A DNA stretch of 63,751 nucleotides, the filler included, from Octopus bimaculoides (Eukaryota): NCBI RefSeq assembly GCF_001194135.2. It is 4 parts of 4 records of this genome, joined end to end, with 100 filler letters (N's around TTAATTAATTAA, not from the genome) between each part and the next. Parts side by side here need not be neighbours in the genome. Positions count along the whole stretch, not along the records: positions 1 to 16,719 come from NC_068999.1; 3 more parts are not named here. One strand, written 5' to 3'. The notes under the pieces are model-generated. The model ran no database searches. It worked only from the letters and a program-made list of their open reading frames with translations, and was not told the origin of the DNA. A program made the translations under genes and the position numbers. Shown here piece after piece: positions 1 to 16,719 of the stretch. Position 1 is the first letter of the stretch. Every line of letters begins with the position of its first letter.

Positions 1-300
1 AAAGGAAACGACTACTATTACCTTCAAACTTTGCTTTTGGTGACCTGAACATCAATGTTTTGAAACTGACCTATTTCCCATTACATCTCAGACAGATTCA
101 GCACTGAGTTGCTGAAGCAGAAATATCGTTATAGCAAATATTCTGCTCAATACCACAGATTTGCTTGTCAGTTGCTTGACCTTAACCAATTGTGATTTTT
201 ATGCCCCTTAGTGACTGACAATATGTGCATCTCTGATCATGAGGAGTAGGGGGGCATCATAGCCACGTGTTGAGAGGGATTCTTTGGGGTTTGGATGAAT
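1..300. repeat. Interspersed repeat fragment (octopus-type), family not assigned
   Basis: Recognised from memory of octopus repeats (ttctgctcaataccacagatttgcttgtcag...gagagggattctttgggg). There is no second copy in this window to confirm it. Confidence 0.35.
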
Positions 301-903
301 GCAACAAATGCAAAGTTTGAAGGAAATATTAGCCATTTTTAACAGGTTCTAGGGGTAAGCAAATAAGAAATAATAGTTGCTACCCAAGGACAAAAATCAT
401 GTAACACGATGTAACATTATGTTAGTATTCAAATACCGATGCTTCTGAGGTTATGGACCTTCCTGTGTGCGTGTGTGTGTTTCTGTTAATAAACGCTAAA
501 GTTAAGTTGCTAAATATAGAACTACCTAATATAAATTTCGTCTCCATCTTAGTTTCAGCTTAAGGTGGCATGTTGACCCTTTGTTGAAGAGCAGGCCGGT
601 GGGGCCAAATTCTTTTCATATCAAAATATTTATGTTGTTTGTCATAAAATCTAGGTTAAATACTGTTAGATACATCAATTTAGAAAGAATCTTATTTCAG
701 CAGATTTGTATTATATGCAGATAATTCAAGTATACATAACATGTACATAGTGAGCGAATGACGTTACCAGACGTTCAAAACGAGCCTCCGTGATTTAAAA
801 AAAAAAAAGAAAGAATGAAAAAAGAAAAGAAAAAATACCGGTAATAAAGCTTATAAATAAATAAATACACAGAATAGATTTACAGAGACTGGAAGCTGTG
901 GAA

Positions 904-1092
904 TTAGCATTCCGATTACTCTGTCAAATGTAATGCTTATTTATTCACACTGTTTGGAATTAATCATGTACTATCTCGTGGCATTAAGACTTCAATAATA
1001 TGATTGCTTATTTTTAGAATTACATTGTAAAATAGGTACGAGAGGCCAGATGGGGTCAATTTCACCATAAAACAGGAAGTATATTTGGACTA
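904..1092. mobile_element. Partial copy of the piggyBac-type MITE family (opposite orientation to 12036-12241)
   Basis: It aligns in reverse complement to 12036-12241 and 3100-3290 (aatgtaatgcttatttattcaca...tttttagaattacattgta). Confidence 0.65.
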
Positions 1093-1794
1093 ACCTCGAA
1101 ATCATTAGTGATGTTCGAAATAACTGTACCTTCACCAACTGCAAGAGCAGCTCCGATCGCCAAGGAAAGTTGATCATTAATATTCATAAGGCATGGATGA
1201 TAGTCAATGAGCTTCAGTTGGAGAGGAACTACTTTGAGTTAGCTTAACAGTTTTCCATCCATATGATCCGCGAGTGCTTCAACATGAACTTCAAAGCACC
1301 TCATCATGGATTTCATGTTAACGTATGGCGGCTTCTTTGCCATCGCAAACCATCCACGAAACCTTGAACGAGGTGATTTTTCAATTTGGCAAAATGATCC
1401 GCCTTGAAAGAAACTATTACTTGCTTCTGCCAACAGATTGCTCACTGAGGTCGTTCCTCTTTATATAATTCTGGTGCGAGAATCAAAATAACACGCACGC
1501 ACACACACTTTCATTTCCCTTGCAATTACTAAGAATTCTTCTCATGCAGGGTTAAACTGTTGATTCTCAACAATTCCTTTTTTTACAGGGATAATTGGAT
1601 AATTGCTGAAATATAGATAAGCGTGGATAAGAATACCTGTTAGAAGTACAGACGTACCACACACACACACGTACACACGCAGACATTCACGCATGCACAC
1701 ACACACACACATACGTTTCCCACAAATGGTGCAGATTATGATTATATTGGAATTTAATATGAAGAAGAAAAAAATTCATGGGTACCCACACATA

Positions 1795-2416
1795 CGAGAG
1801 GGTACCCAAAAGAAACAGGAATTTTGCAACGTTATTTTATTTACTTAGTTTTACATGTTTACACTTTTGTCGCTTTCAAAGTATTCTCCATTTCAATACC
1901 TCGGTTCAGACGCGTTTTCCACTGTTCAAAGCAGTTGCTGGAACTCTTGCCAAGAGACACCTTTGGACGCCTCCGTCGTTTTTTTTCTTCACCTCTTCCA
2001 CATCTGCAAATTCCGCAGCACCAGCTTTCGTCACCAGTGATGACCTTCGAAAAAAAAGATCGATCAACTTACAGCTGTTCTTTCAGTTTACAACATGAAT
2101 TCAGTCGTGAATGCTTTTGATCTGCCGTGAGAACGCGAGGCTCAAATTTTGCTACAACACAGCACGACAACTGTTTCGGCCGTCGTTTTCCCCAGCAGAA
2201 AACAGAAATTTCACGGAAGCACGCTTGTTCCTTCGTTTCAACCGTCGTAAAAGTCGATGAACAGGGAACAAAGACACACCACGAGGCAGTACAACTTCAA
2301 AGGACGACGCCGGTCGGCAGACTGATGCCTGAGGATCGCATCAAGTGGCGGAAGCCTGAACTACAACGGGCTTGTCCTACAGAGCACGTTTCCGGTTACT
2401 TTTGGGTACCCCCTTG
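1795..2416 (-). mobile_element. Internally deleted mariner (Tc1/mariner) element, 622 bp, with TIRs and TA TSD
   Basis: The TIRs cgagagggtacccaaaagaaacaggaa and (rc) caagggggtacccaaaagtaaccggaa are flanked by TA at 1793-94 and 2417-18. Frameshifted minus-strand fragments read VKF.FLLGKTTAETV, AKFEPRVLTADQK...KVITGDESWC, FADVEEVKKK, CFEQWKTRL and NGEYFESDKSV. Confidence 0.85.
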
Positions 2417-2689
2417 TACATACGGACACATCATATATACACACACACATGTAGAGATCTCACTTGGCCCTACCTGATATCTGAAACCGAATCCTCTCGC
2501 TTGTTGCTTGTCAAACAGCAGGAAATTCTTTGTGTTTACATCTCCACTCCAGATGATTAATGGGAAGCACTTGACTTCCTAGGACCTAGATCAGTCCTTT
2601 GTTTAGAATTTGACCTACATCCTAGCATAGTCTATATAACAGAAAGCATTTCCTTTATAACGAAGATGAGTAAATGTAAAAATGGTATA

Positions 2690-3098
2690 GGCGCAGGGGT
2701 GGCTGTGTCATAAGTAGCTTGCTTACCAACCACATGGTTCCGGGTTCAGTCCCACTGTGTGGCACCTTGGGCAAGTGTTTTCTACTATAGCCTCAGGCCG
2801 ACCAAAGCCTTGTGAGTGGATTTGGTAGACGGAAACTGAAAGAAGCCCGTCGTATATATATATGTATGTGTGTGTGTGTGTGTATATGTTTGTGTCTGTG
2901 TTTGTCCCCCCCAACATCGCTTGACAACTGATGCTGGTGTGTTTACTTCCTCGTAACCTAGCGGTTCGGCGAAAGAGACCGATAGAATAAGTACTAGGCT
3001 TACAAAGAATAAGTCCTGAGGTCGATTTGCTCGACTAAAGGGGGTGCTCCAGCATGGCCACAGTCAAATGATTGAAACAAGTAAAAGAATGAAAGAAT
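2690..3098 (+). mobile_element. Full-length tRNA-derived SINE, family A (OK-like octopus SINE)
   Basis: A-box-like gtggctgtgtcataag, B-box ggttcagtcc, a central (TA)/(TG) tract and a gtaaaagaat tail. It is near-identical to 9096-9510. Confidence 0.85.
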
Positions 3099-3099
3099 A

Positions 3100-3290
3100 T
3101 ATAAACTGGCCATACATTGTCTAAATATTTTACTACCTGTTTCATGTTCAAGCTGGCCAGATCCAACTTCTCACACCTATCCTACAATGTCATTCTAAAA
3201 ATAAACAATCATATCATCAAAATCTTGAAGCTACAGGAAAATGCAGGATTAATTCAAAACACATGTGAAATAAACAAATTACTTTTTTAA
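3100..3290. mobile_element. Partial copy of the piggyBac-type MITE family
   Basis: It shares cctacaatgtcattctaaaaataa...gaagctac...gattaattc with 12036-12241. Confidence 0.65.
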
Positions 3291-4301
3291 AAAATGGTTC
3301 ATGTTTTATTGGATGTTATCAGGTATTTTTTTTAAATTAAGTTTTAAAAATGTAATTTCCATCATAGCAATTTAGCACTGACAAATTTTTAACAGATATT
3401 TCTTAAACATCAGCAGCGAAGATAACATTAAAAATTACAAACACACAAACTAAAATATTCCCAATAATTTTAATTCTCTATACTCAATACATTTCATTGA
3501 TCTTTGCTAATTTTTTTTTTTAAATGGATTAGTACAAGAGTATAGAGAGATGACAGGATATTTGTTGCTTATTTATAAGAATTTAAATAAAAATATTTAA
3601 TCCTTATTTACTAAATGCTTTAAAAGAAATATTTCGTAGATGATTTTTAGAGAATCTGAAAAATATATTCAATAATAATCTATTTGTGAATTGTTTTTTA
3701 AATATTTCCTTTAATTTATGAAAATGCAAATGGCTAAGGAAGTAGGGGATGAGACAACCAGCCAAGAATTCGGTGGTTTATATTCTGTTTTGTCAGTAGT
3801 CAACACATTTAACTCTCAAATGGTCCAGTTTTATTTATTTGTAAAAAAAGGTGCTGCATGAGCTCACTGTCTTAAACAGTGACAGAACTGTAAAGTCAAC
3901 AAGTGGTTTGTTAGTTGGCATTGCTGAGTTCAACAGTTCCAGTGGGCATAATAATAACCCAGGAATGTCTTCAATAGGTATACACCAAAAGAAAGACTGG
4001 TTCTACCAAACTGGTTAGCCCAAGATACATTATATGAAAGCTAAAGTATTTGTTAATAACCCTCTGACGCAATACTTCAAGGGACACTTGCATTGCTCTT
4101 AAGTAATGATATAAGTTCCTTGCTCCTGATTCGAATGAATGTAATAGTTCTTTGTCACTTTAATCATTTTTATGCATTAATGTATACAAAAGATGAAAAA
4201 CTAGCTTCAGTTGAAGGTTGAAGAGGGAATGATAGATCAGATCAAAGCTAAATAAATCAATATCACAAGTAGTAATCTTTCAAGAGAGAGATTCGTCAAT
4301 T

Positions 4302-5392
4302 CTATTCAGCACTTTCTAATTCAGTTGCTTTCTTGAGAGCATCAGCAATATCTGTCTTATTTACAAGTCGCTTTGATAAGATGAGCAGGTTTTGTTGGCA
4401 GTGAAAGACGGCCCCATAGCCTTGCTCTGGCATGGAGAACTGTACGTAATATTTTGGAGCTATTAAACAATCACATCCACCCCAGCATTCCACAATCACT
4501 TCAAGCTGCTCTCGATTAACAGACCAGAGATAGGTTTCAAATTGATCTCGGACTTTTTTCTCTAAAACATAAGAACCTTCTTCACTGGCATCACAATGTT
4601 TGTATTCAATCTTAGGAATGAGAACAGGTGGTTCAGGAACCAACGAATGGTATAAATAGTCTACATCATCTTCTGACATTTCACTGATAAAAGAGCATGA
4701 AATGGACTTTTTGCACCCATCAGCCAGTTGCTTAAGCGCCCAATAAGGCCGGTGAATTAAAATAGTTTGTGCAATCCGTTGAAGAGTGTCACTAAGGTCA
4801 CAGGGAGCAGGAACATTTAAAATACCATATTTCCCAAGAACTGTTACTAACATTTCTTCAAGGTTTGCAGAAAACTTTGGTGGCAACATTCTAGCTTCCT
4901 TTAAAGCAGCATTGACAACACACAGTTCAAACTCTGAGAGAGTATTTTTGAAAGATTTCAGAAGACTATCTTCATTTTGAATTTCAGTAATAATAAAACA
5001 AGCAGATGCTTTAGCAAAGCGGACAGGCCAATAGCCATAAAGAAGAAAACCATGAGAGAGTATTTTCCCGAGAACTTCAAAGAAGTCTCCACCATTCTCT
5101 GGACACACAACTGGATACTTTTCAAAGGAACCAGAAAAATGTTTATGAAGAATTTTTTTCCAAAAGCTGCAAAACATTTTTTTAGCCTGTAAGGAGGCTG
5201 TGTTATCGCCAGGTTCAGTTTCTTTGACTGAGGTGAGATTCAAGCAACAGTTGCAAATATCTTCATCATTCTGATAGAGAGGAAAAAGTCGATCCACTAA
5301 ATGCAATTTGGGAGGCATTGTGAGATCTCGTACAGAAGTCAGCTGGTTTCTGGCATTAATTAACCGTGTAAAAAGATCTAGTCGGTTGAAGT
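4302..5392 (-). CDS. Terminal coding exon of a divergent HECT-like E3 ubiquitin ligase domain protein (363 aa from this exon)
   Basis: This is the longest non-N ORF in the window. The acceptor ttttatttcattcaag| precedes 5392 (phase 1). Its motifs follow HECT order: FCSFWKKILHKHFSG, FFEVLGKILSHGFLLYGYWPVRF, LLKSFKNTLSEFE, LQRIAQTILIHRPYWAL, QLEVIVECWGGCD, and VQFS..GAVFHCQQNLLILS (candidate catalytic Cys codon at 4398-4400). The stop codon is at 4302-4304. Confidence 0.85.
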
Positions 5393-5942
5393 CTTGAATG
5401 AAATAAAACAAAAATATTTGTCATTAATAAAGTTTAATAGAGCTGCAAAATTATCAAATACAAATATGAAGTTATAAAGCATTATAAAGAGCACTCAATT
5501 GAAAGTAACAAAATAACAAATGTTAAAGAATTGCTTCTATCATTAGAAAGAAAATGTTTCAGCTCCAAATTGTTCCCCATTCACAGTGTCCACCATTACT
5601 CGTCATCTACCACACACTTTTTCCACTCTGGTACACTTACCTATCCACCAACCTTTTCTGTTCCTCTATCCAAATTCTCTCTCATATTCACCTTGTACTT
5701 TGAGGGTACATTTTCACTTTCACCATCTCTCTCTCTCTCTCTCTCTCTCTCACTTCAGCAATATTTCACATAATAAAGAAAGGACACATTCAATGATGCA
5801 GCCCTAGACACAATGTGAGGAAAGAAAAAGAAAAAAAAACACAAAAAAAACATGACATTCAGTTTGATCATGGAACTACTTGATGAAAATGATACCAAAA
5901 CTAAACAACAAGAATAAACGAAAAGAAACAAAGAACAATTAC

Positions 5943-6012
5943 CTGAATTATTTCTTTGGGAGCTTTCTTCAAAAGATCTTTGATACGGCGACGAATCATT
6001 GGTCAAAACACC
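5943..6012 (-). CDS. Internal 70-nt exon of the HECT-like gene (GVLTNDSSPYQRSFEESSQRNNS+D)
   Basis: Acceptor atattttcag| and donor |gtaatt. It starts in phase 0 and ends in phase 1; g|ac gives Asp in frame with the 5392 exon. Confidence 0.85.
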
Positions 6013-6049
6013 CTGAAAATATAAGATAAAAGCATTGTTATTCAGTAAT

Positions 6050-6228
6050 TATGCTTAACGATATTTCGTCCACCTTTACATTCTGAGTTCAAATGCCACA
6101 GAGGTCGACTTTAACTTTCATCTTTCTGGGGTTGATAAAATAAATACCAGGTAAACACTAGGATCAGTGTAATCGACTGGCCCCCTCCCCAAGATTTTAG
6201 GCTTTGTGCCTATAATTGAAAGTATTAT
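6050..6228 (+). mobile_element. Degenerate tRNA-derived SINE, family B (OR1-like)
   Basis: ttctgagttcaaatgccacagaggtcgacttt...ataccag...ttgtgcctata, matching many other copies in the window. Confidence 0.75.
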
Positions 6229-6584
6229 TAAATGATCATTGAATTAAACACATCTATGATTTCCAATTGGAAATTTTGCTTCCAGATATAATAGCAAAGT
6301 GAAGCGTCACTGAAATATCATCATCATCATCATCATCAACTTTAGGTAGCTGTCCATCAGGACTCAGGGTCTTTGCTGCCTTTAATTTTAGTTCTTCAGC
6401 CTATAACAAGGGAGTCTAAGACTGGCTGTCCATGGGAACTTCTGTATGATCTAGTCCAGGTAGAAGGCAATCTTTTACAAAAAGCAGGCCACATGAGACA
6501 TGGCTCATCAGGTGGGACATACTATTTAAAAAATTCAAAGTAATTGGTATACAAATTAGGTGTAGCATTCAGAAAGTCTCGTGA

Positions 6585-7200
6585 GCCACAGTTTATTTAT
6601 GACTGATCTAGTCAAAGGATTAAAGAAGAAATTCCATGTATGGAAGCACAATCTAGAATTGAGTGGTCTTAATGTAAACATAGCAAGGACAAAAGTTTCA
6701 GCTAGCATAAAGGAAGGCAAAACTCTACTGCTATCTAGGAAGGAAACTGGCATGATATGCAGAAAAGAAGATAGGAATATCATACAGTATACTGAATATA
6801 ATATGGAAGCACCAAAGAAGCAATGGGATTGATAGAAAAGAAAAGTAATTTTAGCAGTAAGATCACCAACAAAATACATTTTTTCAAATGCTCAGAAGAC
6901 CTCATTAGAAGTAGCTGATTGTTTCTCATTATCTAACTGACCAAATTAGTAGTGGAGGAGAATGTTTTGAAAATATAGCAGCCAGAGTAAGCATGGGGGT
7001 TGTAAATTTCAAAGAAAGTAACAAAGTGATTTTCTCTTAGAGACTGCATGATGGCTGAGTATGAAGCATAACATTACATTGTAGTAAGACATGGAATGCA
7101 GTGGATCTGTGGGATAGGAGCTAGGGAAAATAATTAGGCATGCATGCTCCAGTGGACATATAATGTTAATGTGAGATTGCACTATTGTGAGGTGTGTTGA
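6585..7200 (+). mobile_element. Decayed RTE-clade LINE RT/C-terminal fragment
   Basis: It translates to KKFHVWKHNLELSGLNVNIARTKV...ICRK and aligns to the younger RTE copy at 12870-13220 (gaagtagctgattgtttc, gaccaaattagtagtggagg, gccagagtaag). Confidence 0.7.
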
Positions 7201-7590
7201 TGGAGCTCTTTTTTCTTCTTCACTTGATCATCCCAGTGTGCGCCCCAGTATTGTCTTCAGTTGTCTCCCTTTTTTACATCAATGACTTTACATCATGACA
7301 CAACTTTTCATTCTTCTCTAACCAAGCATTATCCATTCACAACCTAGGTACCACACACCGGCCCCACACCAATACCATGAAGAGAGACCTTGAAAGCCTC
7401 CTTCAATGGAAATATTACCAATCTAGTGTCTTTCCACAAGAAAAAATCTAAAGTCACTTATATCAAGAAAACCTCATCTCAAGTCCCTCTTCAACATGAG
7501 CAACATAGAGCCCTCACAATTGCTCCAAATATCCGTCAGGTTTCACTAAGGATTTCTCCTGACAAAAGCACATACTTAACATAGCTAGAA
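7200..7590 (+). mobile_element. Highly decayed CR1/L2-like RT fragment
   Basis: FYINDF-like and NLVSF..KSK remnants resemble the RT segments LYINDL and NLVSFN.SKT. Confidence 0.35.
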
Positions 7591-7694
7591 CCAATGACTA
7601 TGATACATTTTTGATAATGATGTTCGTAGAAAACAAGGTTTCACATATTAAAGGTTAGTCATGGCTATATAGTTAAGAAATTCACTTCACAATT

Positions 7695-7820
7695 TGTGGT
7701 TCTGGATGTTAACCCACTTGCAGGAGCCTTAGGCAGGTGTCTTCTACATAACCTTGGGTTGACCAATGCTTTGTGAATGCAGTTTGGTAGATGGAAACTG
7801 CAGAAGCTTGTTATATATCA
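7695..7820 (+). mobile_element. 5' part of SINE family A (degenerate)
   Basis: tttggtagatggaaactgcagaagcttgttatatat matches 2820-2855. Confidence 0.65.
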
Positions 7821-7821
7821 G

Positions 7822-8000
7822 AATCATTTAACGTCCGTCTTCCATGCCGGCATGGGTTGGACGGTTTCACAGGAACTGACAAGCCTGCAGACTTCACTAA
7901 GCTCTACTGTCTGCTTTGATATGGTTTCTACAGGTGTGTACCCTTCCTAATGCAAAACCACTTTACAGAATACATTGGATACTTTTTATGTGGCACCAGC
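7822..8000 (-). mobile_element. RTE 3' tail fragment
   Basis: Reverse complement of 13590-13770 (tttaacgtccg..ttccatg...gcatgggttggacg). Confidence 0.7.
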
Positions 8001-8094
8001 ACCATGTATGTATGTATGTGTGTGTGTGTACATACGTACGTATGTATCCATCCTCATCCATACACAATGATATAAAAAAAATTTTTTAATGAGA

Positions 8095-8430
8095 ATAAGG
8101 TACCTTTTATTTGTTTGTCATTGGACTGCAGCCATGCTGGAGCACCACCTTGAAGGATTTAGTCAAACAAATCCGACCCCAGTTCTTAATTTTAAGTCTA
8201 CCAGTTTCTTTTGCCAAACAGCTAAGCTATGGGAACATAAACAAACCTACACCAGTTGTCAAGCAATGCAAGGGGGACCACACAAAAACACACGATGAGC
8301 TTCCATACTGTTTCCTTCTACCAGATTTACTCAGAGAGCATTGATCAGCCCAAGGTGACACTTGCTGAAGTGGCTGCACAGTGGAACTGAACCTAAAACT
8401 GTGTGATTGCAAAGCAAATTTCTTAACCAC
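8095..8430 (-). mobile_element. SINE family A, degenerate
   Basis: gccatgctggagcaccacc is the reverse complement of the family A 3' region; the head remnant is gaactgaacctaaaactgtgtg. Confidence 0.65.
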
Positions 8431-8799
8431 AGAACCAATTTTTTTTTTTTTCAACATAGAATATTGTTATATTTCGGGATGGTCAGTTTTTTTGAGGTTT
8501 TTTTTTTTTTACCAAATAACCACACATACTATATATTCATTCTTCACTCATTTATTACTGTTCAAATTTTAACTGATATCCATTGGACATCAGTTAAAAT
8601 AAGAACAATAATAAATAAGTGAAGAACGAATATATAGTGTGTGTGGTTATTCGGCAAAGATAAAAAAAAAGACTATCCTGAAATATAACAATATCTGTTT
8701 CAACACACGGTTTCAGATCAGGAATCTTGCAACACAAATTCATATACATTTCTCATAAATTTGTGTGTAAATCTTCAGAAAATAGATAAAAAAATTTAC

Positions 8800-8919
8800 C
8801 TCATCTAATGACAGATGTGATGTTGACATTTCACCATACGATTGTTCATCATCTGTGGACGTAAAACTTGCATTGCCAACAGTTTGAACAATTTCCAGAG
8901 GAGGTGAGTTACTGTCGCC
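8800..8919 (-). CDS. Internal 120-nt exon of the HECT-like gene (GDSNSPPLEIVQTVGNASFTSTDDEQSYGEMSTSHLSLDE)
   Basis: Acceptor tattatttttaag| and donor gag|gtaaat. Phase 0/0, open, and joins GVLTND in frame. There is an in-frame ATG at 8827-8829. Confidence 0.8.
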
Positions 8920-9095
8920 CTTAAAAATAATAATTAAGATTAAGTTTATAATGAGCAAAATAAATAAATGAATAAATAAAAATAAATGAAAATGAAGAGA
9001 AAGATTATGGTTTTTATACTGAAGCTACAGAATCTGAAATTTTGACATAAGATAACATTTCTGGAAAAGAAATAATTTAGTAAAATAATTAACAA

Positions 9096-9510
9096 GCGCA
9101 GGAGTGGCTGTGTGGTAAGTAGCTTGCTTACGAACCACATGGTTCCGGGTTCAGTCCCACTGCGTGGCAAGTGTCTTCTACTATAGCCTCGGGCCGACCA
9201 AAGCCTTGAGAGTGGATTTGGTAGACAGAAACTGAAAGAAGCCCGTCGTATATGTATATATATATATATNNNNNNNNNNTGTGTGTGTGTGTGTGTATAT
9301 GTTTGTGTATCTGTGTTTGTCCCCCCAACATCGCTTGACAATCGCTGCTGGTGTGTTTATATCCTTGTAACTTAGCGGTTCGGCAAAAGAGACCGATAGA
9401 ATAAGTACTAGGCTTACAAAGAATAAGTCCTGGGGTCGATTTGCTTGACTAAAGGCGGTGCTCCAGCATGGCCAGTCAAATGACTGAAACAGGTAAAAGA
9501 GTAAAAGAGA
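9096..9510 (+). mobile_element. Full-length young SINE family A copy in an intron of the HECT-like gene
   Basis: Near-identical to 2690-3098, with CpGs retained. Confidence 0.85.
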
Positions 9511-9749
9511 AAGTATTACATTCTCTTCTTTTCCTTTTGCATTATCTCTCTTAATGTAATTAACTTTAAGAGAGAGAGTGAGTGGGGAGAGGGAATGTGT
9601 GTGTGTGTATGAGTGACGAATAGGATGCGTGCGTGTGTGTATGAGTGTGTGAATAAAGTACAGCATGTATGTGAACAAAAACCAGAAAGCAATGAGTAAA
9701 GACTAAGATGTGTATGTACTTTTCATTAGATAATATTGATTTAAAATTT

Positions 9750-9955
9750 TGGCACAATTTTAGGATGGAAATTTGTGGGGAAGGGTCCAGGTGATTATAT
9801 TGACCCAGCATTCAACTGGTACTTATTTCATTAACCCAGAAAGGATGAAGGACAAAGTCGGCCTCAGCAGGATTTGAACTCAGAACATAAAGACAAATGA
9901 AATGCGGCTAAGCATTTTGCCCCATGTGCTAATAATTCTGCCAGCTTGCAGCCTT
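9750..9955 (-). mobile_element. SINE family B with CpG decay
   Basis: caactggtacttattt...gaaggatgaaggacaaagtcggcctcagcaggatttgaactcagaacataaagac. Confidence 0.8.
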
Positions 9956-10049
9956 GTTACAGATGGATAATATTGATGTGACAACAGTATACCCCAACTA
10001 GTGTGTCACTTCATCTGTAATCACAGACCCACCATTAAGGCATAGGCTT

Positions 10050-10200
10050 TACACGTGCCACCGGCACAAGTGCCCAGAAGGCGACGCTGGGCACAGGTGC
10101 CATCACGATTTCGCTTTCGCTTGCCCCAACAGGTCTTCGCAAGCCGAGTTTCGTGTCCAATGAAGGAGACGACGTTGGCGTGGGTACCAGTCGTCGAATT
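10050..10200 (-). mobile_element. CpG-rich RTE 3'UTR-like fragment
   Basis: The reverse complement ends in ggtggcacgtgtaaa, similar to ggtgacacgtaaaag at 13592. The family is recalled from octopus RTE 3'UTRs. Confidence 0.4.
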
Positions 10201-10503
10201 TAGTTCATGAGATCAAAACTTACAACTAGAGCCATTATCATGCCTCTGGGCAAGGTACATAACTCATTAACTACTTGCCTCAGTCTGCCTGACTGATAGG
10301 AGGTTTCCTCTCCTAATTCATGACTGAGTGGTTAGAAGCAGTAGGAAATGAACATCCAGCTGTAAAAACAAAAGATACACATTGGTGTCTTCTGAGAAAG
10401 TTAAGACTTTAAGTTTTGAACAATGCCATTGTTAGAGTAGAAGTTTTTCTTCTCCAACAAATTAGCGTCCGTTAAACAGTCTCAACTTCGTACCCCTACT
10501 TAC

Positions 10504-10581
10504 GCTGGATCTTCAAAAGGATTCATACTCACAGATCATCACTTGTCTACCAGTTCAAGTGATCCAACAACACATAAATAT
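10504..10581 (-). other. Candidate 5' (mostly UTR) exon of the HECT-like gene with two alternative donors
   Basis: Acceptor gcaattttag| precedes 10581. Donors are |gtgagt (exon end 10533) and |gtaagt (exon end 10504). All three frames are closed in the 5' part; ATG AAT CCT TTT GAA GAT CCA GC lies between the two donors. Confidence 0.4.
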
Positions 10582-11045
10582 CTAAAATTGCAATAACAAA
10601 ACAAAAAAAAAAACTGCTCCATACATGCTTGTATAGATATATGGATGTAACACAATTAAAAAAAAATATATATCTTTAAAGGTTTAATTGAATTTGTAAC
10701 AAAAGCATGTATCTCTATGGTCAGATTAAAAACATGATATCAGGCATGCAAATAGATAGAATTAAGATAACAATTTCAATGAGTATTAATTCCAAAATGG
10801 TTAATAAGATGGTAATTAACATCTAATAATTTAAGAATTAGAACTGTTAAACCAAAAATACTAACTACCAAATTTTGCAATATTGTAAAATGAAAATGCT
10901 AATTCAACAAAATTCAAATGATTTCCTGATATTATCAATTTGTACATGAAGAAAATCAATTAATGGTAAAAGTAAATGTAGAAAAGGAGAGGATCCAAAT
11001 GAAAATGGGGTTAGATTTCTGAAGTTCAAATGATGATACAAATAA

Positions 11046-11750
11046 CATTGGAGAACATGGGTTTTGTTGTCTGGTGTTGGAGATGTATTTCCTAGTAATT
11101 TTGAGGTGCTGATTTCAAAAATGAAATCCATTTTGCTCTACCATGTCAAGATTTTTGACAAACTCAAATGTCCATTTTTCAAAATTTCTGATATTATCAC
11201 CATATTACAACATAAGTCTAAAAGTGCATTTTCTGCACAGTCATCTGGACTACTTCCCTGAAAATCATAATGCAATAAGTAAGGAGCAAGGAGAAAAATT
11301 CCACCAAGACATCGAGACCGTGGAGACTGAATATCAGGTAGATGGAACACAAACATAATGGCTCACTACTGCTAGTCTCTGCCAAGTGACAGTCGTGATG
11401 CAAATTATTCACACAAAGCAGCAAAGAGAAAGTTCATTCTCTTAATAGCTCCATTCTGACAGAAATATCTATCCTAGGATGTGTAATTAAACATTTTGTG
11501 TAATATATTTGTTAAACAACAAAAAGTTTAGTATCATTTGGTTTGTGTTAGTTTCTTATTTCAGTATTACATTTAATAACAACATTAAAATGTTTTTGGT
11601 AAAAAAAAAACTGAATTCCTGTTTAACAAAAAAACTTGACATGATAGAAAATTTCTGAGGGTATTTCTGAACACAGCACCACCAAATTAGGTAGAATGAA
11701 TTGTAAAAAGCAAGACAAGTAAAAAATTTTTTTGAAAATGTTCCCCGGTT
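11046..11750 (+). mobile_element. Non-autonomous Chapaev3-like (CMC) DNA transposon retaining the transposase C-terminus
   Basis: The peptide ISLKVHFLHSHLDYFPENHNAISKEQGEKFHQDIETVETEYQ/GRWNTNIMAHYC matches the SLKxHFLHSHLDxFPEN...GERFHQDI motif. Inverted subterminal repeats lie at 11085-11160 and 11628-11700; the termini are cattggagaacat and atgttccccggtt. Confidence 0.7.
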
Positions 11751-11829
11751 ATCAATAAAATAATAAAAACAGCTGACCAGCCCTATTACTTACGGATAAA
11801 CAATGCAACTGTGCTTATTCAGAGAGTAA

Positions 11830-11962
11830 GCTGCAGGGGAAAAAACTTGAGGTGATAGAAGAAAACTGAGTGTAGTTTTGAAATCAGCATGCTAATTTTA
11901 GTCTAAAATCAAGGGAAAAGGCAAACTCAACAGAAATTATGTTAAAAAATGTTCTTCTGTGT
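11830..11962 (+). mobile_element. Second Chapaev3-like right-terminus fragment
   Basis: aaaaaacttgaggtgatagaag...gaaatcagca...aatgttcttctgtg parallels 11630-11750. Confidence 0.5.
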
Positions 11963-12035
11963 AATCTTGTTAAGAAGAAATGTTAATCCGAGAAATTGGA
12001 ATGGTTGATTAGATAGTGTTGGCTTTTCAGTTTAA

Positions 12036-12241
12036 CCCTTTAGCATTTAAGCAGGTTCATATCCAGCCTGAATATTCTACTTGTTCTACATTGAAACCCA
12101 CTTGATCAGACCTTTCACACATACCCTACAATGTCATTTTTAAAATAATCACAGCATGGAATCTCGAAGCTACATGATCAATTCGAGGCAATGCAAATAA
12201 ACAAGCATTACACTTACCAGAGTGATTTGAATGCTAAAAGG
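12036..12241. mobile_element. Complete 206-bp piggyBac-type MITE with TTAA target-site duplication
   Basis: ttaa|ccctttagcatt ... aatgctaaaagg|ttaa, with TTAA at 12032-35 and 12242-45. Confidence 0.8.
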
Positions 12242-12242
12242 T

Positions 12243-12418
12243 TAAGAATAAAACAATAAAATTATCCCTGTCTCAATACTCAAGCATTAGCAACAGAGAG
12301 AAAGCACACCTGAACTTGAAGGGTAGTTAATAAGAATAAGACAATAAAATTATCCCTGTCTCAATACTCAAGCATTAGCAACAGAGAGAAAGCACACCTG
12401 AACTTGAAGGGTAGTTAA
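12243..12418. repeat. Direct tandem duplication, 2 x 88 bp
   Basis: Units start at 12243 and 12331 (taagaataa...gggtagttaa) and differ by one substitution. Confidence 0.9.
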
Positions 12419-12597
12419 TAAATATTTTAAAAGATTTTTAGTTATTATTATCACCATTTAAACAATATTTTCCTCCATACTGACATAAACTGGAAATTTC
12501 CTCTATTTCTTACAGCTGTATCACTTATAAACCTAAAGTGATTCAATATTACTGTTATCGGATAAATGAGTTTTGCTCATCTTAAGCCATCTCAATA

Positions 12598-12795
12598 TTG
12601 GTTTCACATGTTGGCACAAGACCAGTAAGTTTGGAGGAGGGTGCATAAGTTGATTACATCAACCTCAGCGCTGGACTGGTACATATTTTATTGACCCTGA
12701 AAGGTTAAGTCAACATCAGTGGAATTCCAACATCAGTGGAATTTCAACTCAAAACAAAGATGTACGAAATGCCACCAAGCATTTTGCCTACAAGA
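12598..12795 (-). mobile_element. Degenerate SINE family B
   Basis: ttggcacaagaccag...actggtacatattttattgaccctgaaagg...gaatttcaactcaaaac. Confidence 0.65.
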
Positions 12796-12864
12796 TATAA
12801 TATTGTCAGACTTTTTTACATTGAGCCTCTATTTTTAAAGCATTTTATTATTATTACAGTTCAT

Positions 12865-13776
12865 TCAGTATGTAGAAAAGGAGTAGGTAGTAACTCTATA
12901 AGATGTACCCGGTGCAAGCTATGGACACATAAGAGGTGCAGCAACATCAAAGGCAGGTTAACTAGCAAGTTTTTATTTGTGGAAGATGTTCAGGTGCAAT
13001 AAAGACTGTAAACAAACAGGAAACAACTTCTATCTCATTCCAGGGTGAAAAACTAGAGGTAGTCGATAGCTTCCTCTATCTGGGCGACCAAGTTAGTAGT
13101 GGGGGTGGGTGCGCTGAAAGTGTAGCTGCTAGAATAAGAATAGCCTGGGCAAAGTTTAGAGAGCTCTTACCCCTGCTGGCGACAAAGGGACTCTCACTCA
13201 GAGTAAAAGGCAGACTGTATGANNNNNNNNNNNNNNNNNNNNNNNNNNNNNNNNNNNNNNNNNNNNNNNNNNNNNNNNNNNNNNNNNNNNNNNNNNNNNN
13301 NNNNNNNNNNNNNNNNNNNNNNNNNNNNNNNNNNNNNNNNNNNNNNNNNNNNNNNNNNNNNNNNNNNNNNNNNNNNNNNNNNNNNNNNNNNNNNNNNNNN
13401 NNNNNNNNNNNNNNNNNNNNNNNNNNNNNNNNNNNNNNNNNNNNNNNNNNNNNNNNNNNNNNNNNNNNNNNNNNNNNNNNNNNNNNNNNNNNNNNNNNNN
13501 NNNNNNGCTGAGGTGGTGAGGCAAGACCTTCGTACATTGGGCCTCACCGAGGCGATGACTACTGACCGAGACCTTTGGAAATGTGCTGTGCGGGTGACAC
13601 GTAAAAGCACCCACTACACTCTCTGAGTGGTTGGTGTTAGGAAGGGCATCCAGCTGTAGAAACTCTGCCAAATTAGATTGGAGCCTGGTGTTGCCATCCG
13701 GTTTCACCAGTCCTCAGTCAAATCGTCCAACCCATGCTAGCATGGAAAGCGGACGTTAAACGATGATGATGATGAT
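12865..13776 (+). mobile_element. Young 5'-truncated RTE-clade LINE (RT C-terminus, 3'UTR, (GAT)n tail), interrupted by an N gap
   Basis: CRKGVGSNSIRCTRCKLWTHKRCSNIKGRLT then EKLEVVDSFLYLGDQVSSGGGCAESVAARIRIAWAKFRELLPLLATKGLSLRVKGRLY. The tail is gttaaacgatgatgatgatgat. Confidence 0.9.
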
Positions 13777-14125
13777 TCGCCTATGTAAAAATATTATAGC
13801 AATTTGGTTACCACAAGATCATTGAAGAATTACAAAGAACATAAGCACACTGAATAAATACAATAATTCTGTGTAAAACAAGATGGACAAACAAAATAAT
13901 AAAAAGCATAGATGTAACATAATTTCATTTTCCCCTCCTCTCTATTTGTCTGTTACTTTGATTCTAGATTATTATATCGTGATATTTGGGGACATGGATG
14001 TTTTATTTCCAAAATATGTTAACTTAAGTAAAATCAGAGGGAATTCTTTAGGCTCCCACCCTACCAAAAACCTAAACAAAAAAGGAGAACAATATCGATC
14101 CCTAATTGTATTATACATTCTATGA

Positions 14126-14318
14126 TATCATACAGACAAAAAAGTAGCCATGAAAACAGCACAAAGATTGGATTTTTATACCCTTTTAGGATGGTATCAG
14201 TTCTGTGACTGTCTGCTAACAACTTTTTCCATCATATAATGGTAAAACACCCAATCTTTCTGCTGTTTTCATGGCTATTCTGTGTTTGAAATATTACTTT
14301 CTTGTCTGTAATATGATA
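14126..14318. repeat. Inverted repeat / fold-back element
   Basis: Arms at 14145-14171 and 14251-14277 are complementary at 26 of 27 positions; outer arms are 14126-14144 and 14297-14318. Confidence 0.85.
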
Positions 14319-14430
14319 GACATTCAACACTTCCAAAAACAAAAAAAGAGTTTGTTTACATATGTTATACATTCTATATTTTCTAAATAAAGGATACCCT
14401 AGTTTTCTCTTTAACACCCACACACACATA

Positions 14431-14610
14431 CACAAGGGGGTACTGGAAAGTTCCTAACTTTGGGTAAAAGAAAATACAGTTAATTAGGATTTTATTCAAC
14501 ATATTCCCTTCTCAGATTCACACACTTGTTGCAACGAGCCTTCAGCTTTTCTAAACCAAGAACTCAGAAGGTTGAGCCGCCAACAAGGCCTTTCATGGTA
14601 CCTTTAAATT
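14431..14610 (+). mobile_element. Mariner-type MITE (family shared with 41995-42175)
   Basis: ta|cacaagggggtactggaaagttcctaactttgggtaaaagaaaatac matches the reverse complement of 42130-42175. Confidence 0.7.
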
Positions 14611-14620
14611 NNNNNNNNNN

Positions 14621-14925
14621 TAGAAAAATGAATACTTTTTAACGAAATTTTTAGTAAATACCTTTCAAATGTTGTAGATTCCAAGAATATAGGAATTCGT
14701 TGGGAAAAACATTTTCTGAGGGGTGGGAAGAGGAGTTTTGGAAAAACTTACACAACCCTACTTTTTTTCCTCATGACTTTCAGAAAAAAGGGTATCTTTT
14801 AATAAAATTTTACAGAAATACCTTTCAAATGGCATAGATTACAATTATATAGAAATTTTGTTGGTAAAAAATTTTTTCCAAACGGCTGGGTAGAGGAGTT
14901 TTGGGAAATTCACACAAAGCCAGTT
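14621..14925. repeat. Diverged ~170-bp tandem duplication (probable DNA-element subterminal repeats)
   Basis: aaatacctttcaaatg..tagatt...gaggagttttgg occurs twice (about 14655-14740 and 14815-14905). Confidence 0.6.
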
Positions 14926-15805
14926 TAATGTTAGGAAAATACTGACTTGCAGAGAACTGCAAGATTTAAATGAGGGAGGTAAATCGCTGAGGGACACCAG
15001 CAACATGAAAATTAAGTCAAGCTAGATTCATTATACTTAATGTAACGAGAAAAGAAAAACCTATTAAATAATAACATGTAAGAAGAAAAGATTAGCTCAA
15101 CGACAATGACTAATATTAATTTAACTTAATCTTGGCAAGTTTGTGTGACAACTCTGAACATGTTTCTATCTTATTAGACCTCCTCAGTAGAGGAGACCTA
15201 ATAGAGCATACTAACCAGATTAGTGATAAGGGAATCACTACGTTGATGTACAATAATGTACAGGAGCAGGTATCAAAAATAGGCAATTTCTAGTTGTGTG
15301 ACACATACTCATGAACATTATTTCAGAATTAGTGAATTAGCTACAAGCAGGAACTGAACCTGGTTCTCAGATTCAGTTTCTAAGAACTTACCACCTAAGC
15401 TATGGTGCTTGCCCATTTGTACAAATACTGTAAAATAAAAGAAAATTGTTTCTATAAATGGAAAAATGGGCAAGATGTGAACAAGTTACATAGCAGCCCA
15501 CACTACAATTTGATATGGTACGCAAAGGTGTCACATCTTTATTCTTATGATTAACCATTTTGTTTTTTTTTGTTTTTGTTTTGTTTTTTCAAATTTTAAT
15601 TTAGCAAATCATAATAGTGATGCATCATCAAAAACAGTACACCACTGACGATTGATGATTGATGTCAGGAAGTTCAGTAAACGTAACACTGAGGAAAACA
15701 AAAAATACGTTTTCAATGAAACTGAATCCATAAATGACCCCTCCCCCAACTGATACACCACAATGTACTAGCTCAGCCACTAAATAAAAAACGCCTAATA
15801 ATGAT

Positions 15806-16016
15806 TTCAAATCTTGGCACAAGGCCAGCAATTTCGAGGGAACAACTAAGTCGATTACATCACCCCCAGTACTCAACTGGTACTTGTTTTATCAATCCTG
15901 AAAGGACGAAAGACAAAGTCGACCTCGGCAGAATTTGAACTCAGAACATGAAGACAGACGAAATGCTGTCAAGCATTTCACCTGGCATGCTAATGATTCT
16001 GCCAGCTCACTGCCTT
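15806..16016 (-). mobile_element. Full-length SINE family B with heavy CpG>TpG/CpA decay
   Basis: gcatttcacctggcatgctaatgattctgccagctcactgcc here, versus gcatttcgcccggcgtgctaac...ctcgccgcc in intergenic copies. Confidence 0.85.
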
Positions 16017-16719
16017 TAAAATAAAAAATAAAAATAAATAAATAAATAAAAAACCTAATAATCCATGATCGAAGAAAGAATAGGTAAGAAAGAAATATTC
16101 TCAAAGTCAAATGCCATGCAAAAAGACGAAAGATTCTCAAATGATAATAAAGAAACAGTAAAGGTGTTACAAACATCTTACAGAATAAAACAGAGCTGGA
16201 CATTCAATTCACAGGCAACAGTCTCTTCAGAAACTTTTGCATTGTTCAAGATACAAAGCTCCTTTCAAAGAGAAGCAGAGTGTGAGACATCTTGGCACAG
16301 CTGTTTTGGTATCACTTATTCAGTGTCGCTAATTTGATGCAGACTTATTTGGACATCAGAAGTTTTAATGTTTTGCTTGTTCTCTCTCTCTCTCTCTCTT
16401 GCTATCCCTCTAAGCATATTTCTCTTTATTCGTATGAGGAGAGAGAAGGTGATTATGTAAGCCATGTTCAATTAATAAATTGTACTGTCTCTCCCTCTTT
16501 CAGTCTTTATGTGTATATTTCTGCAAGCGTGCGTGTGTGTGTGTGTGTGGTCATGCCAAATTTTTTGTGGCCAAACAGCTGTGTCCAATCGTCTCATTCT
16601 AGGCAAGCAATTTAGTATGATATTGGGCAAGTGTATTCTGCTATAACTTTGGGCCAACCAAAGCCTTGGAAGTGGATTTGGTAGACAGAAACTGAAAGAA
16701 GCCTGTCATATGTGTGTGT

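What the first reader, a model, noticed from the sequence alone, without database searches (positions are those of the whole stretch)
4302..8919. Divergent HECT-like ligase with no recognisable substrate-binding module and the whole HECT in one exon
Seen: three exons with canonical splice sites and matching phases give at least 426 aa (396 aa from the ATG at 8829). The first ~65 aa are Ser/acid-rich and low in structure; the rest follows HECT N-lobe and C-lobe motif order. Known: HECT E3s use a C-lobe Cys in a PxAHTCFNxLxLP-type motif and usually carry C2/WW, RCC1 or other N-terminal domains. Here the motif is GAVFHCQQNLLILS, so His-Cys is kept but Pro, Thr and Phe are not, and the usual FLxFxTG segment reads IVECWGG. 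Inference: this is a member of the small, rapidly diverging HECT-only (G2E3-like) class, either active with a non-canonical site or a pseudo-ligase. The uninterrupted 1.09-kb HECT exon could reflect a retroposed origin.
Basis: partly seen in the sequence, partly recalled or inferred. Interest (0 to 1): 0.7.

Follow-up and report, generated by a model that had tools for sequence, protein, structure and literature searches.

The report
Catalytically dead HECT-like gene tail
This is the 3' end of a real, conserved mollusc gene whose last exon encodes a full HECT ubiquitin-ligase fold that has lost its catalytic cysteine. It is most likely a non-enzymatic "pseudo-ligase" attached to a larger, uncharacterised protein, not a stand-alone enzyme.

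Summary
The three minus-strand exons exist as described: 8919-8800, 6012-5943 and 5392-4302, all with AG/GT sites, giving 426 aa.

- **Real coding sequence.** Against a 94%-identical orthologue, the last exon has dN/dS of 0.12 and no indels, while its flanks are 86% identical with gaps.
- **HECT fold.** Pfam and PDB sequence searches on the protein alone find nothing. An AlphaFold model built on 42 homologues (pLDDT 93, pTM 0.90) matches only HECT domains in the PDB. Canonical HECT ORFs with an HTC motif link it to the family by sequence.
- **No catalytic Cys.** Cys331 sits in the Thr column, and Gln332 occupies the catalytic column. All 19 members of this mollusc subfamily lack the catalytic Cys, whereas 23 of 23 canonical relatives have it. 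The C-terminal -4 Phe is absent here too.
- **Not HECT-only.** Exon A is internal. Orthologous squid-like mRNAs encode 795-813 aa, with a strongly conserved, unknown N-terminal domain that lies beyond the window.
- **Single-exon domain is old.** A bivalve-like relative has the same arrangement, so it is not evidence of recent retroposition.

Verdict: a pseudo-HECT gene of moderate interest.

The parts
8800..8919 (-). Exon A. An internal coding exon of 120 nt encoding GDSNSPPLEIVQTVGNASFTSTDDEQSYGEMSTSHLSLDE, part of the Ser/acid-rich linker.
   Evidence: AG acceptor at 8921-8920 and GT donor at 8799-8798. The frame is closed by stops upstream. It is 82% identical in protein to P0002 residues 379-416. 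The mRNA L003 aligns to 8913-8800 at 81.6% and stops exactly at the donor.
6013..8799 (-). Intron 1 (2787 nt). Contains repeat copies and an 85-nt-arm palindrome.
5943..6012 (-). Exon B. 70 nt encoding GVLTNDSSPYQRSFEESSQRNNS plus 1 nt. It is needed to keep the frame between exons A and C.
   Evidence: AG/GT sites, and a length of 1 mod 3 that restores the frame. The segment QRSFEESSQRN aligns with QRIDEENHHRN of the P0216 mRNA product. No transcript evidence from this species.
5393..5942 (-). Intron 2 (550 nt). Contains a (GA)n microsatellite.
   Evidence: Identity to L001 drops to 86% with gaps upstream of 5392. The acceptor TTCATTCAAG|AC is conserved in L001.
4302..5392 (-). Exon C. The terminal coding exon, holding 363 codons plus the TAG stop at 4304-4302. 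It encodes the whole HECT-like domain.
   Evidence: dN/dS 0.12. AF2 pLDDT 93.4. Foldseek returns HECT domains only.
4632..5390 (-). HECT N-lobe-like part, roughly residues 1-253 of the 362-aa domain. The boundary is approximate.
   Evidence: Model secondary structure. Full-length alignment to the HUWE1 HECT domain through profile A2.
4305..4631 (-). HECT C-lobe-like part, roughly residues 254-362. The boundary is approximate.
   Evidence: HMM alignment to the AREL1 C-lobe.
4395..4397 (-). Gln332 codon. This residue occupies the catalytic-Cys column.
   Evidence: In this column 23 of 23 canonical relatives have Cys and 0 of 19 subfamily members do.
4398..4400 (-). It sits in the Thr column of xHTC.
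   Evidence: It is shared only with the 94% orthologue P0001 and is Ser in P0002 and P0216.
4467..4469 (-). Cys308 codon in the W-x-G-x-D-C-L motif. This Cys is invariant within the subfamily.
   Evidence: 19 of 19 in the Cys-less subfamily against 2 of 23 in canonical relatives.
3305..4301 (-). Probable 3' UTR (inferred). AATAAA signals start at 3839 and 3310.
   Evidence: L001 stays alignable down to 3211. Orthologous mRNAs carry about 1 kb of 3' UTR. Poly(A) signal positions come. No read evidence.

Best explanation
Window 4302-8919 (minus strand) holds the last three coding exons of a longer, multi-exon gene. The gene belongs to an uncharacterised family whose named members are all molluscs, and it is a paralogue of Octopus bimaculoides LOC106878106.

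The family architecture has four parts:
1. a variable N-terminus;
2. a strongly conserved ~135-aa domain of unknown fold;
3. a Ser/acid-rich linker;
4. a C-terminal HECT-fold domain encoded in one terminal exon.

The HECT-like domain keeps the bilobal fold and is under strong purifying selection. However, the catalytic Cys is replaced (Gln332 here) in every sampled member of the subfamily, and the C-terminal -4 Phe is missing in this copy. It therefore most likely cannot form the ubiquitin thioester.

I infer that it works as a non-catalytic module, for example docking an E2, ubiquitin or a partner protein, in a protein whose specificity or other activity lies in the N-terminal domain.

Shown: the exon structure, selective constraint, fold, loss of the Cys and the family architecture. 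Inferred: the non-catalytic binding role, and that this particular gene carries the N-terminal domain, which lies beyond the window edge.
For: - **Constraint.** The exon is 94.3% identical to the orthologue with no gaps, against 86% in the flanks. dN/dS is 0.12.
- **Homologues.** 475 hits at E<=1e-3. P0002 and P0216 are 795 and 813 aa, 66-68% identical, and come from ~3.5-kb mRNA-like contigs in more than 20 runs. They cover exons A to C.
- **Fold.** AF2 gives pLDDT 93.4 and pTM 0.90. The top 50 Foldseek PDB hits are all HECT domains at probability 1.0.
- **Sequence link to HECT.** Family profile A2 hits AREL1, HUWE1, UBR5, E6AP and NEDD4 HECT domains, with E down to 1e-9. 23 of the 42 aligned homologues pass as Pfam HECT.
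- **Catalytic column.** Cys in 23 of 23 canonical relatives and 0 of 19 subfamily members. The window has Gln.
- **Single loss.** The subfamily/canonical split gets 100/100 NJ bootstraps with the catalytic loop columns removed.
- **N-terminal domain.** A conserved N-terminal domain is present in all ten long members aligned.
- **Taxonomy.** Named members are all molluscs.
Against: - No transcript or read evidence from this species. Exon B rests on splice logic and weak homology.
- The window protein alone gives no Pfam or PDB sequence hit, and neither does the subfamily-only profile. Sequence homology to HECT is therefore transitive, backed by the structure prediction.
- The N-terminal exons are not in the window, so the full architecture of this copy is inferred.
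- Cys331 lies next to the catalytic column, and Cys308 is invariant in the subfamily. Residual or relocated catalysis is not formally excluded.
- No functional data exist for any member.
Confidence: 0.78

Rival explanations
1. It is an active HECT E3 that uses the neighbouring Cys331 (FHCQQN) as a non-canonical catalytic nucleophile.
For: Cys331 is one residue from the catalytic column, in the same loop. It is conserved in the 94% orthologue P0001. Pseudoenzymes with migrated catalytic residues are known in general (review PMC10211241, abstract seen).
Against: The position is Ser in the cephalopod orthologues P0002 and P0216, and is Pro, Ser, Asn or Gln elsewhere in the subfamily. The domain as a whole is under strong constraint, so an essential nucleophile should be conserved. 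The -4 Phe tail is missing. The conserved Ala of AxTC is Phe in 18 of 19 members.
Confidence: 0.06
2. It is a stand-alone HECT-only gene of 396-426 aa, either starting at the ATG at 8829 or with exon A as its first exon, and perhaps a retrocopy.
For: Many relatives in other phyla are ORFs of about 330-360 aa that contain only the HECT domain. No upstream exon is found within the 7.8 kb of window upstream.
Against: Exon A begins at a good acceptor site and the frame upstream is closed. The Met at 8829 is an internal conserved residue (YGEMS) of 795-813-aa orthologues. Introns interrupt the linker, which is unlike a retrocopy. L007 shows N-terminal exons 7-8 kb upstream of the same terminal exon, and cephalopod introns can exceed the window.
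Confidence: 0.07
3. It is a decaying pseudogene or a TE-derived relic ORF with no function.
For: No Pfam hit. The region is rich in interspersed repeats. No annotated protein from a close species was recovered.
Against: dN/dS is 0.12, with 38.5 synonymous against 18.5 non-synonymous differences and no indel across 1091 nt, while the flanks have many gaps. The ORF is intact. Orthologues are expressed as full-length mRNAs in other cephalopods. The predicted fold has high confidence.
Confidence: 0.04

Closest known systems
G2E3 and the 'G2E3-like Metazoa' (GL-Metazoa) divergent HECT families, class IV of Grau-Bove et al. 2013 (PMC3673628)
   Same: The HECT domain is highly divergent. Relatives are scattered, often short, HECT ORFs in cnidarians, amphioxus, priapulids and molluscs. 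The HECT domain of mammalian G2E3 is reported as non-functional as a ligase (PMC3673628). The best Foldseek TM-scores here are to UBR5, the other class IV family (TMq 0.61-0.64).
   Different: G2E3 carries N-terminal PHD/RING-like zinc fingers, and none is detected in the orthologues here. This subfamily has actually lost the catalytic Cys and carries a different, unknown N-terminal domain. Membership was not tested against a real G2E3 sequence, because none was on hand.
Canonical HECT E3 ligases with solved structures (E6AP, NEDD4/Rsp5, HUWE1, AREL1, UBR5)
   Same: The same bilobal fold along the whole domain. The FxTG(S) segment and the LxLP/S motif of the C-lobe are recognisable.
   Different: About 10-14% identity. 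No catalytic Cys, no -4 Phe, and no Pfam HECT hit on the protein itself.
Octopus bimaculoides LOC106878106 (UniProt A0A0L8GAG7, 'HECT domain-containing protein') and its bivalve and gastropod homologues, all annotated 'uncharacterized protein'
   Same: The same subfamily, with the same signature (F329, W303, C308), the same loss of the catalytic Cys, and the same architecture in P0002 and P0216.
   Different: Only 33-35% identical, so it is a paralogue and not the same gene. No named protein from a public annotation was recovered for the window's own gene. The k-mer search is lossy, so this is weak evidence.

Membership tests
HECT domain (fold level) | Bilobal N-lobe/C-lobe HECT fold over about 350 residues | tested here: met
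   AF2 pLDDT 93.4, pTM 0.90. The top 50 Foldseek PDB hits are all HECT domains, probability 1.0, about 400 aligned columns.
HECT domain (Pfam PF00632) | Match to the Pfam HECT profile above the gathering score | tested here: not met
   No Pfam family matched even at E<=10 for the window protein. Two subfamily members reach only E of about 2e-3, below the cut-off. 23 of the 42 aligned homologues do match, so the link is transitive.
HECT E3 ligase (enzyme) | Catalytic Cys in the C-lobe loop (xHTC) | tested here: not met
   Gln332 occupies the column. 0 of 19 subfamily members have Cys there against 23 of 23 canonical relatives.
HECT E3 ligase (enzyme) | Conserved Phe four residues from the C-terminus | tested here: not met
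   The protein ends ...ATELESAE. The tail that holds F-D-x-x in canonical relatives is absent.
HECT E3 ligase (enzyme) | Forms a ubiquitin thioester and transfers ubiquitin | not testable with these tools
   Needs a biochemical assay.
G2E3 proper | N-terminal PHD/RING-like zinc fingers ahead of the HECT domain | tested here: not met
   No Pfam domain in the full-length orthologues P0002 and P0003 or in the bivalve homologues. The N-terminal domain matches nothing in Pfam or PDB.
G2E3-like / class IV divergent HECTs | Groups phylogenetically with G2E3 or GL-Metazoa reference sequences | not tested
The only support is indirect: the taxon spectrum of the relatives and UBR5 being the best structural match.
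Mollusc 'N-terminal domain + Cys-less HECT' family (LOC106878106-like) | C-terminal domain clusters with the Cys-less subfamily and shares its signature (F329, W303, C308) | tested here: met
   100/100 NJ bootstraps with the loop columns removed. Invariant columns.
Mollusc 'N-terminal domain + Cys-less HECT' family (LOC106878106-like) | Conserved ~135-aa N-terminal domain (KRGPKEK...YCLPDK...GYGYPAQDY...YRIDKQRRLIR...KYQGSLIIIPY) | tested here: inconclusive
   Not found in window 1-16719 by tblastn. It is present in the 66-68%-identical orthologues whose mRNA covers exon A. The exons probably lie beyond the window edge.

The most novel reading that the evidence does not exclude
The subfamily did not simply lose catalysis but relocated it. 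Cys308, in the W-x-G-x-D-C-L segment of the C-lobe, is invariant in all 19 Cys-less members and rare (2 of 23) in canonical relatives. It could act as a new nucleophile, giving a HECT fold with a transplanted active site. Alternatively, the dead HECT together with the unknown N-terminal domain could form a new, mollusc-specific type of ubiquitin-system regulator.
Probability: 0.07. Interest if true: 0.8.

Novelty: new variant of a known kind. Interest (0 to 1): 0.4.

Why it matters
HECT ligases are defined by their catalytic cysteine. The standard cited example of a non-catalytic HECT domain is that of G2E3.

This family keeps the whole fold under strong purifying selection across cephalopods, bivalves and gastropods, yet it lacks the cysteine and is fused to a conserved domain with no known relative. 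That makes it a clean natural case for asking what a HECT scaffold does when it cannot transfer ubiquitin.

It also flags a set of mollusc genes that are currently annotated only as 'uncharacterized'. On the practical side, it shows that motif-level reading of the HTC loop can be off by one residue and can suggest an active site that is not there.

Tried and rejected
- **Pfam and PDB on the protein alone.** Pfam on the window protein gave no hit even at E<=10, and phmmer against PDB gave none.
- **K-mer homologue search.** It returned only one 94% orthologue and missed P0002. The full HMMER scan was needed.
- **AF2 with a two-sequence alignment.** Useless, with pLDDT 36.
- **Subfamily-only profile (A3) against PDB.** No hit at E<=1. 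Only the profile that includes canonical relatives reaches HECT structures.
- **tblastn of P0002, P0003 and P0007 N-termini against the window.** No upstream exon found.
- **Exon B in the sister-species contigs.** Contigs L001 and L002 break at a (GA)n repeat and a TE insertion before reaching it.
- **N-terminal family domain against Pfam and PDB.** Nothing significant.
- **Literature searches.** Nothing on this family or on Cys-less HECT domains in molluscs.
- **Retrocopy idea.** Rejected as a recent event, because a bivalve-like genome has the same single terminal exon.
Full report
**1. The observation**

The gene lies on the minus strand.
- Exon A is 8919-8800, with AG at 8921-8920 and GT at 8799-8798, and it ends on a codon boundary.
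- Exon B is 6012-5943 (70 nt, AG/GT).
- Exon C is 5392-4302 (1091 nt, ending in TAG).

Joined, they give 426 aa. Joining A directly to C breaks the frame, so an exon of length 1 mod 3 is needed, and exon B fits. The reading frame upstream of 8919 is closed by stops and 8919 follows a good acceptor, so exon A is an internal exon.

**2. It is a real, constrained coding exon**

A 94%-identical ORF (P0001) sits on two co-linear, unspliced contigs of a related species (L001 and L002).
- Exon C is 94.3% identical at the nucleotide level with no gaps.
- The intron upstream and the first 400 nt downstream are 86% identical, with 28-32 gap columns.
- Nei-Gojobori counts are 38.5 synonymous and 18.5 non-synonymous differences, giving dN/dS of 0.12.

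This rules out a chance ORF or a decaying pseudogene.

**3. What the protein is**

The protein alone hits nothing in Pfam or in PDB sequences. A full HMMER scan of 1.8 billion representatives found 475 relatives.

An alignment of 42 of them (A2) gave a confident AlphaFold model, with pLDDT 93.4 and pTM 0.90. A two-sequence alignment had given only pLDDT 36. All 50 listed Foldseek PDB matches are HECT domains aligned over about 400 columns at probability 1.0. They include Rsp5, UBR5, HUWE1, NEDD4, E6AP, AREL1, Smurf and Tom1, and the best TM-scores (0.61-0.64) are to UBR5.

By sequence, the A2 profile reaches HECT structures, with AREL1 at E=1e-9 and HUWE1 matched over the full length. 23 of the 42 aligned homologues match Pfam HECT. 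A profile of the closest 19 sequences alone does not reach PDB. Sequence homology is therefore transitive, but the fold evidence is direct. The HECT assignment is sound.

**4. The catalytic site**

MAFFT and an HMM alignment that includes the AREL1 C-lobe fragment agree. AREL1 P-T-A-H-T-C-F-N-Q-L-C-L-P aligns with window A-V-F-H-C-Q-Q-N-L-L-I-L-S. The window's Cys331 falls on the Thr, and Gln332 falls on the catalytic Cys.
- In the catalytic column, all 23 canonical relatives have Cys.
- None of the 19 members of the window's subfamily does. Their residues are Q, Q, H, Y, R, S, R, R, H, D, N, D, D, N, D, F, E, S and G.
- Cys331 is shared only with the 94% orthologue. The next cephalopod orthologues (P0002 and P0216, 66-68% identical) have Ser there and His in the catalytic column.
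- The Ala of AxTC is Phe in 18 of 19 members.
- The C-terminal tail that carries the -4 Phe in canonical relatives is missing in the window protein.

With the loop columns removed, the Cys-less group separates from the canonical group in 100 of 100 NJ bootstraps. This is consistent with a single ancestral loss. Named members are Octopus, Dreissena, unionids, Saccostrea, Mytilus, Pecten, Tegillarca, Solemya and Haliotis, so the loss predates the split of cephalopods, bivalves and gastropods.

**5. It is not a HECT-only protein**

P0002 (795 aa) and P0216 (813 aa) are complete ORFs on ~3.5-kb contigs with UTRs, seen in about 20 runs. They are spliced mRNAs of other cephalopods.
- Their residues 379-416 match exon A at 82%, and the mRNA alignment ends exactly at the donor at 8800.
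- The segment QRIDEENHHRN matches exon B's QRSFEESSQRN.
- Everything from DLF onward matches exon C.

The Met at 8829 is the internal M of the conserved YGEMS. All ten long family members aligned share a ~135-aa N-terminal block that is more conserved than the HECT part (63% mean column identity). It has no Pfam or PDB match. tblastn does not find this block in window 1-16719, so I infer that the exons lie further upstream.

**6. The single-exon HECT domain**

In L007, a 1.48-Mb genomic contig of a bivalve-like relative, the whole HECT-like domain is again one ~1.1-kb terminal ORF, and the N-terminal-domain exons sit 7-8 kb upstream. Many canonical relatives are also recovered as uninterrupted ~330-aa ORFs on large contigs. 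The intron-less domain is therefore an old family trait and is not evidence for a recent retrocopy.

**7. Mechanism**

Shown: an intact HECT fold under purifying selection, without the nucleophile. Inferred: the domain acts non-catalytically, as a docking or regulatory module, within a larger protein. This parallels the reported non-functional HECT domain of mammalian G2E3 (PMC3673628).

Two residual possibilities remain.
- Cys331 might act one position out of register. This is unlikely, because the residue is not conserved.
- Cys308 is invariant in 19 of 19 subfamily members against 2 of 23 canonical relatives. It could be structural or, speculatively, a relocated nucleophile.

I could not measure distances in the model, because no coordinates were accessible.

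**8. Comparison and novelty**

The closest described groups are the divergent class IV HECTs: UBR5, G2E3, GL-Metazoa and GL-Bikonta (PMC3673628). The canonical relatives found here come from Nematostella, Hydractinia, corals, Branchiostoma, Priapulus and Mytilus, which fits a G2E3-like metazoan group. I had no G2E3 reference sequence, so membership is untested.

G2E3's zinc fingers are absent here. UniProt already labels the octopus paralogue a 'HECT domain-containing protein', so the fold assignment is not new. The family-wide loss of the Cys, the conserved unknown partner domain and the restriction of named members to molluscs appear undescribed in the papers searched. I rate it a new variant of a known kind, with moderate interest.

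**9. Limits**

Exon B is the weakest part of the model. The taxonomic reach of the subfamily beyond molluscs is unknown, because several members come from unnamed contigs.

Noticed in passing
window 2691-3060, 9096-9474, 16626-16715 (+); inverted partial copy at 8197-8292: There are three direct copies (88-94% identical) of an interspersed repeat. Its head looks tRNA-like (GGTTCCGGGTTCAGTCCCACTG), so it is probably a SINE. A partial inverted copy lies inside intron 1 of the gene.
   Followed up: partly
window 8498-8582 / 8584-8668: Near-perfect palindrome in intron 1, with 85-nt arms that are 87% complementary and 1 nt apart. It could be a MITE-like element or a hairpin.
   Followed up: no
window 12243-12418: Two tandem copies of an 88-nt unit, 99% identical.
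   Followed up: no
window 12736-13002 (+): An 88-aa ORF with a sub-threshold PHD-finger match (E=2e-4, below the Pfam cut-off). Probably a relic of a mobile element in the long upstream intron or intergenic DNA.
   Followed up: partly
window 9270-9279, 13223-13506, 14611-14620: Runs of N (assembly gaps). An upstream exon could in principle be hidden in the 284-nt gap.
   Followed up: no
window 4467-4469 (-): Cys308 in W-x-G-x-D-C-L is invariant in all 19 Cys-less subfamily members and rare (2 of 23) in canonical relatives. It is the only invariant Cys of the subfamily.
   Followed up: partly
outside the window: P0002 residues ~195-335, and L007 1856-2905: The family's N-terminal ~135-aa domain (KRGPKEK...YCLPDK...GYGYPAQDY...YRIDKQRRLIR...KYQGSLIIIPY) is more conserved than the HECT part. 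It has no Pfam or PDB match, so it may be a new domain.
   Followed up: partly
L001 1-785: The sister-species contig diverges from the window upstream of the (GA)n repeat near 5750. The sequence there looks like a retroelement insertion, so intron 2 differs in content between the two species.
   Followed up: no
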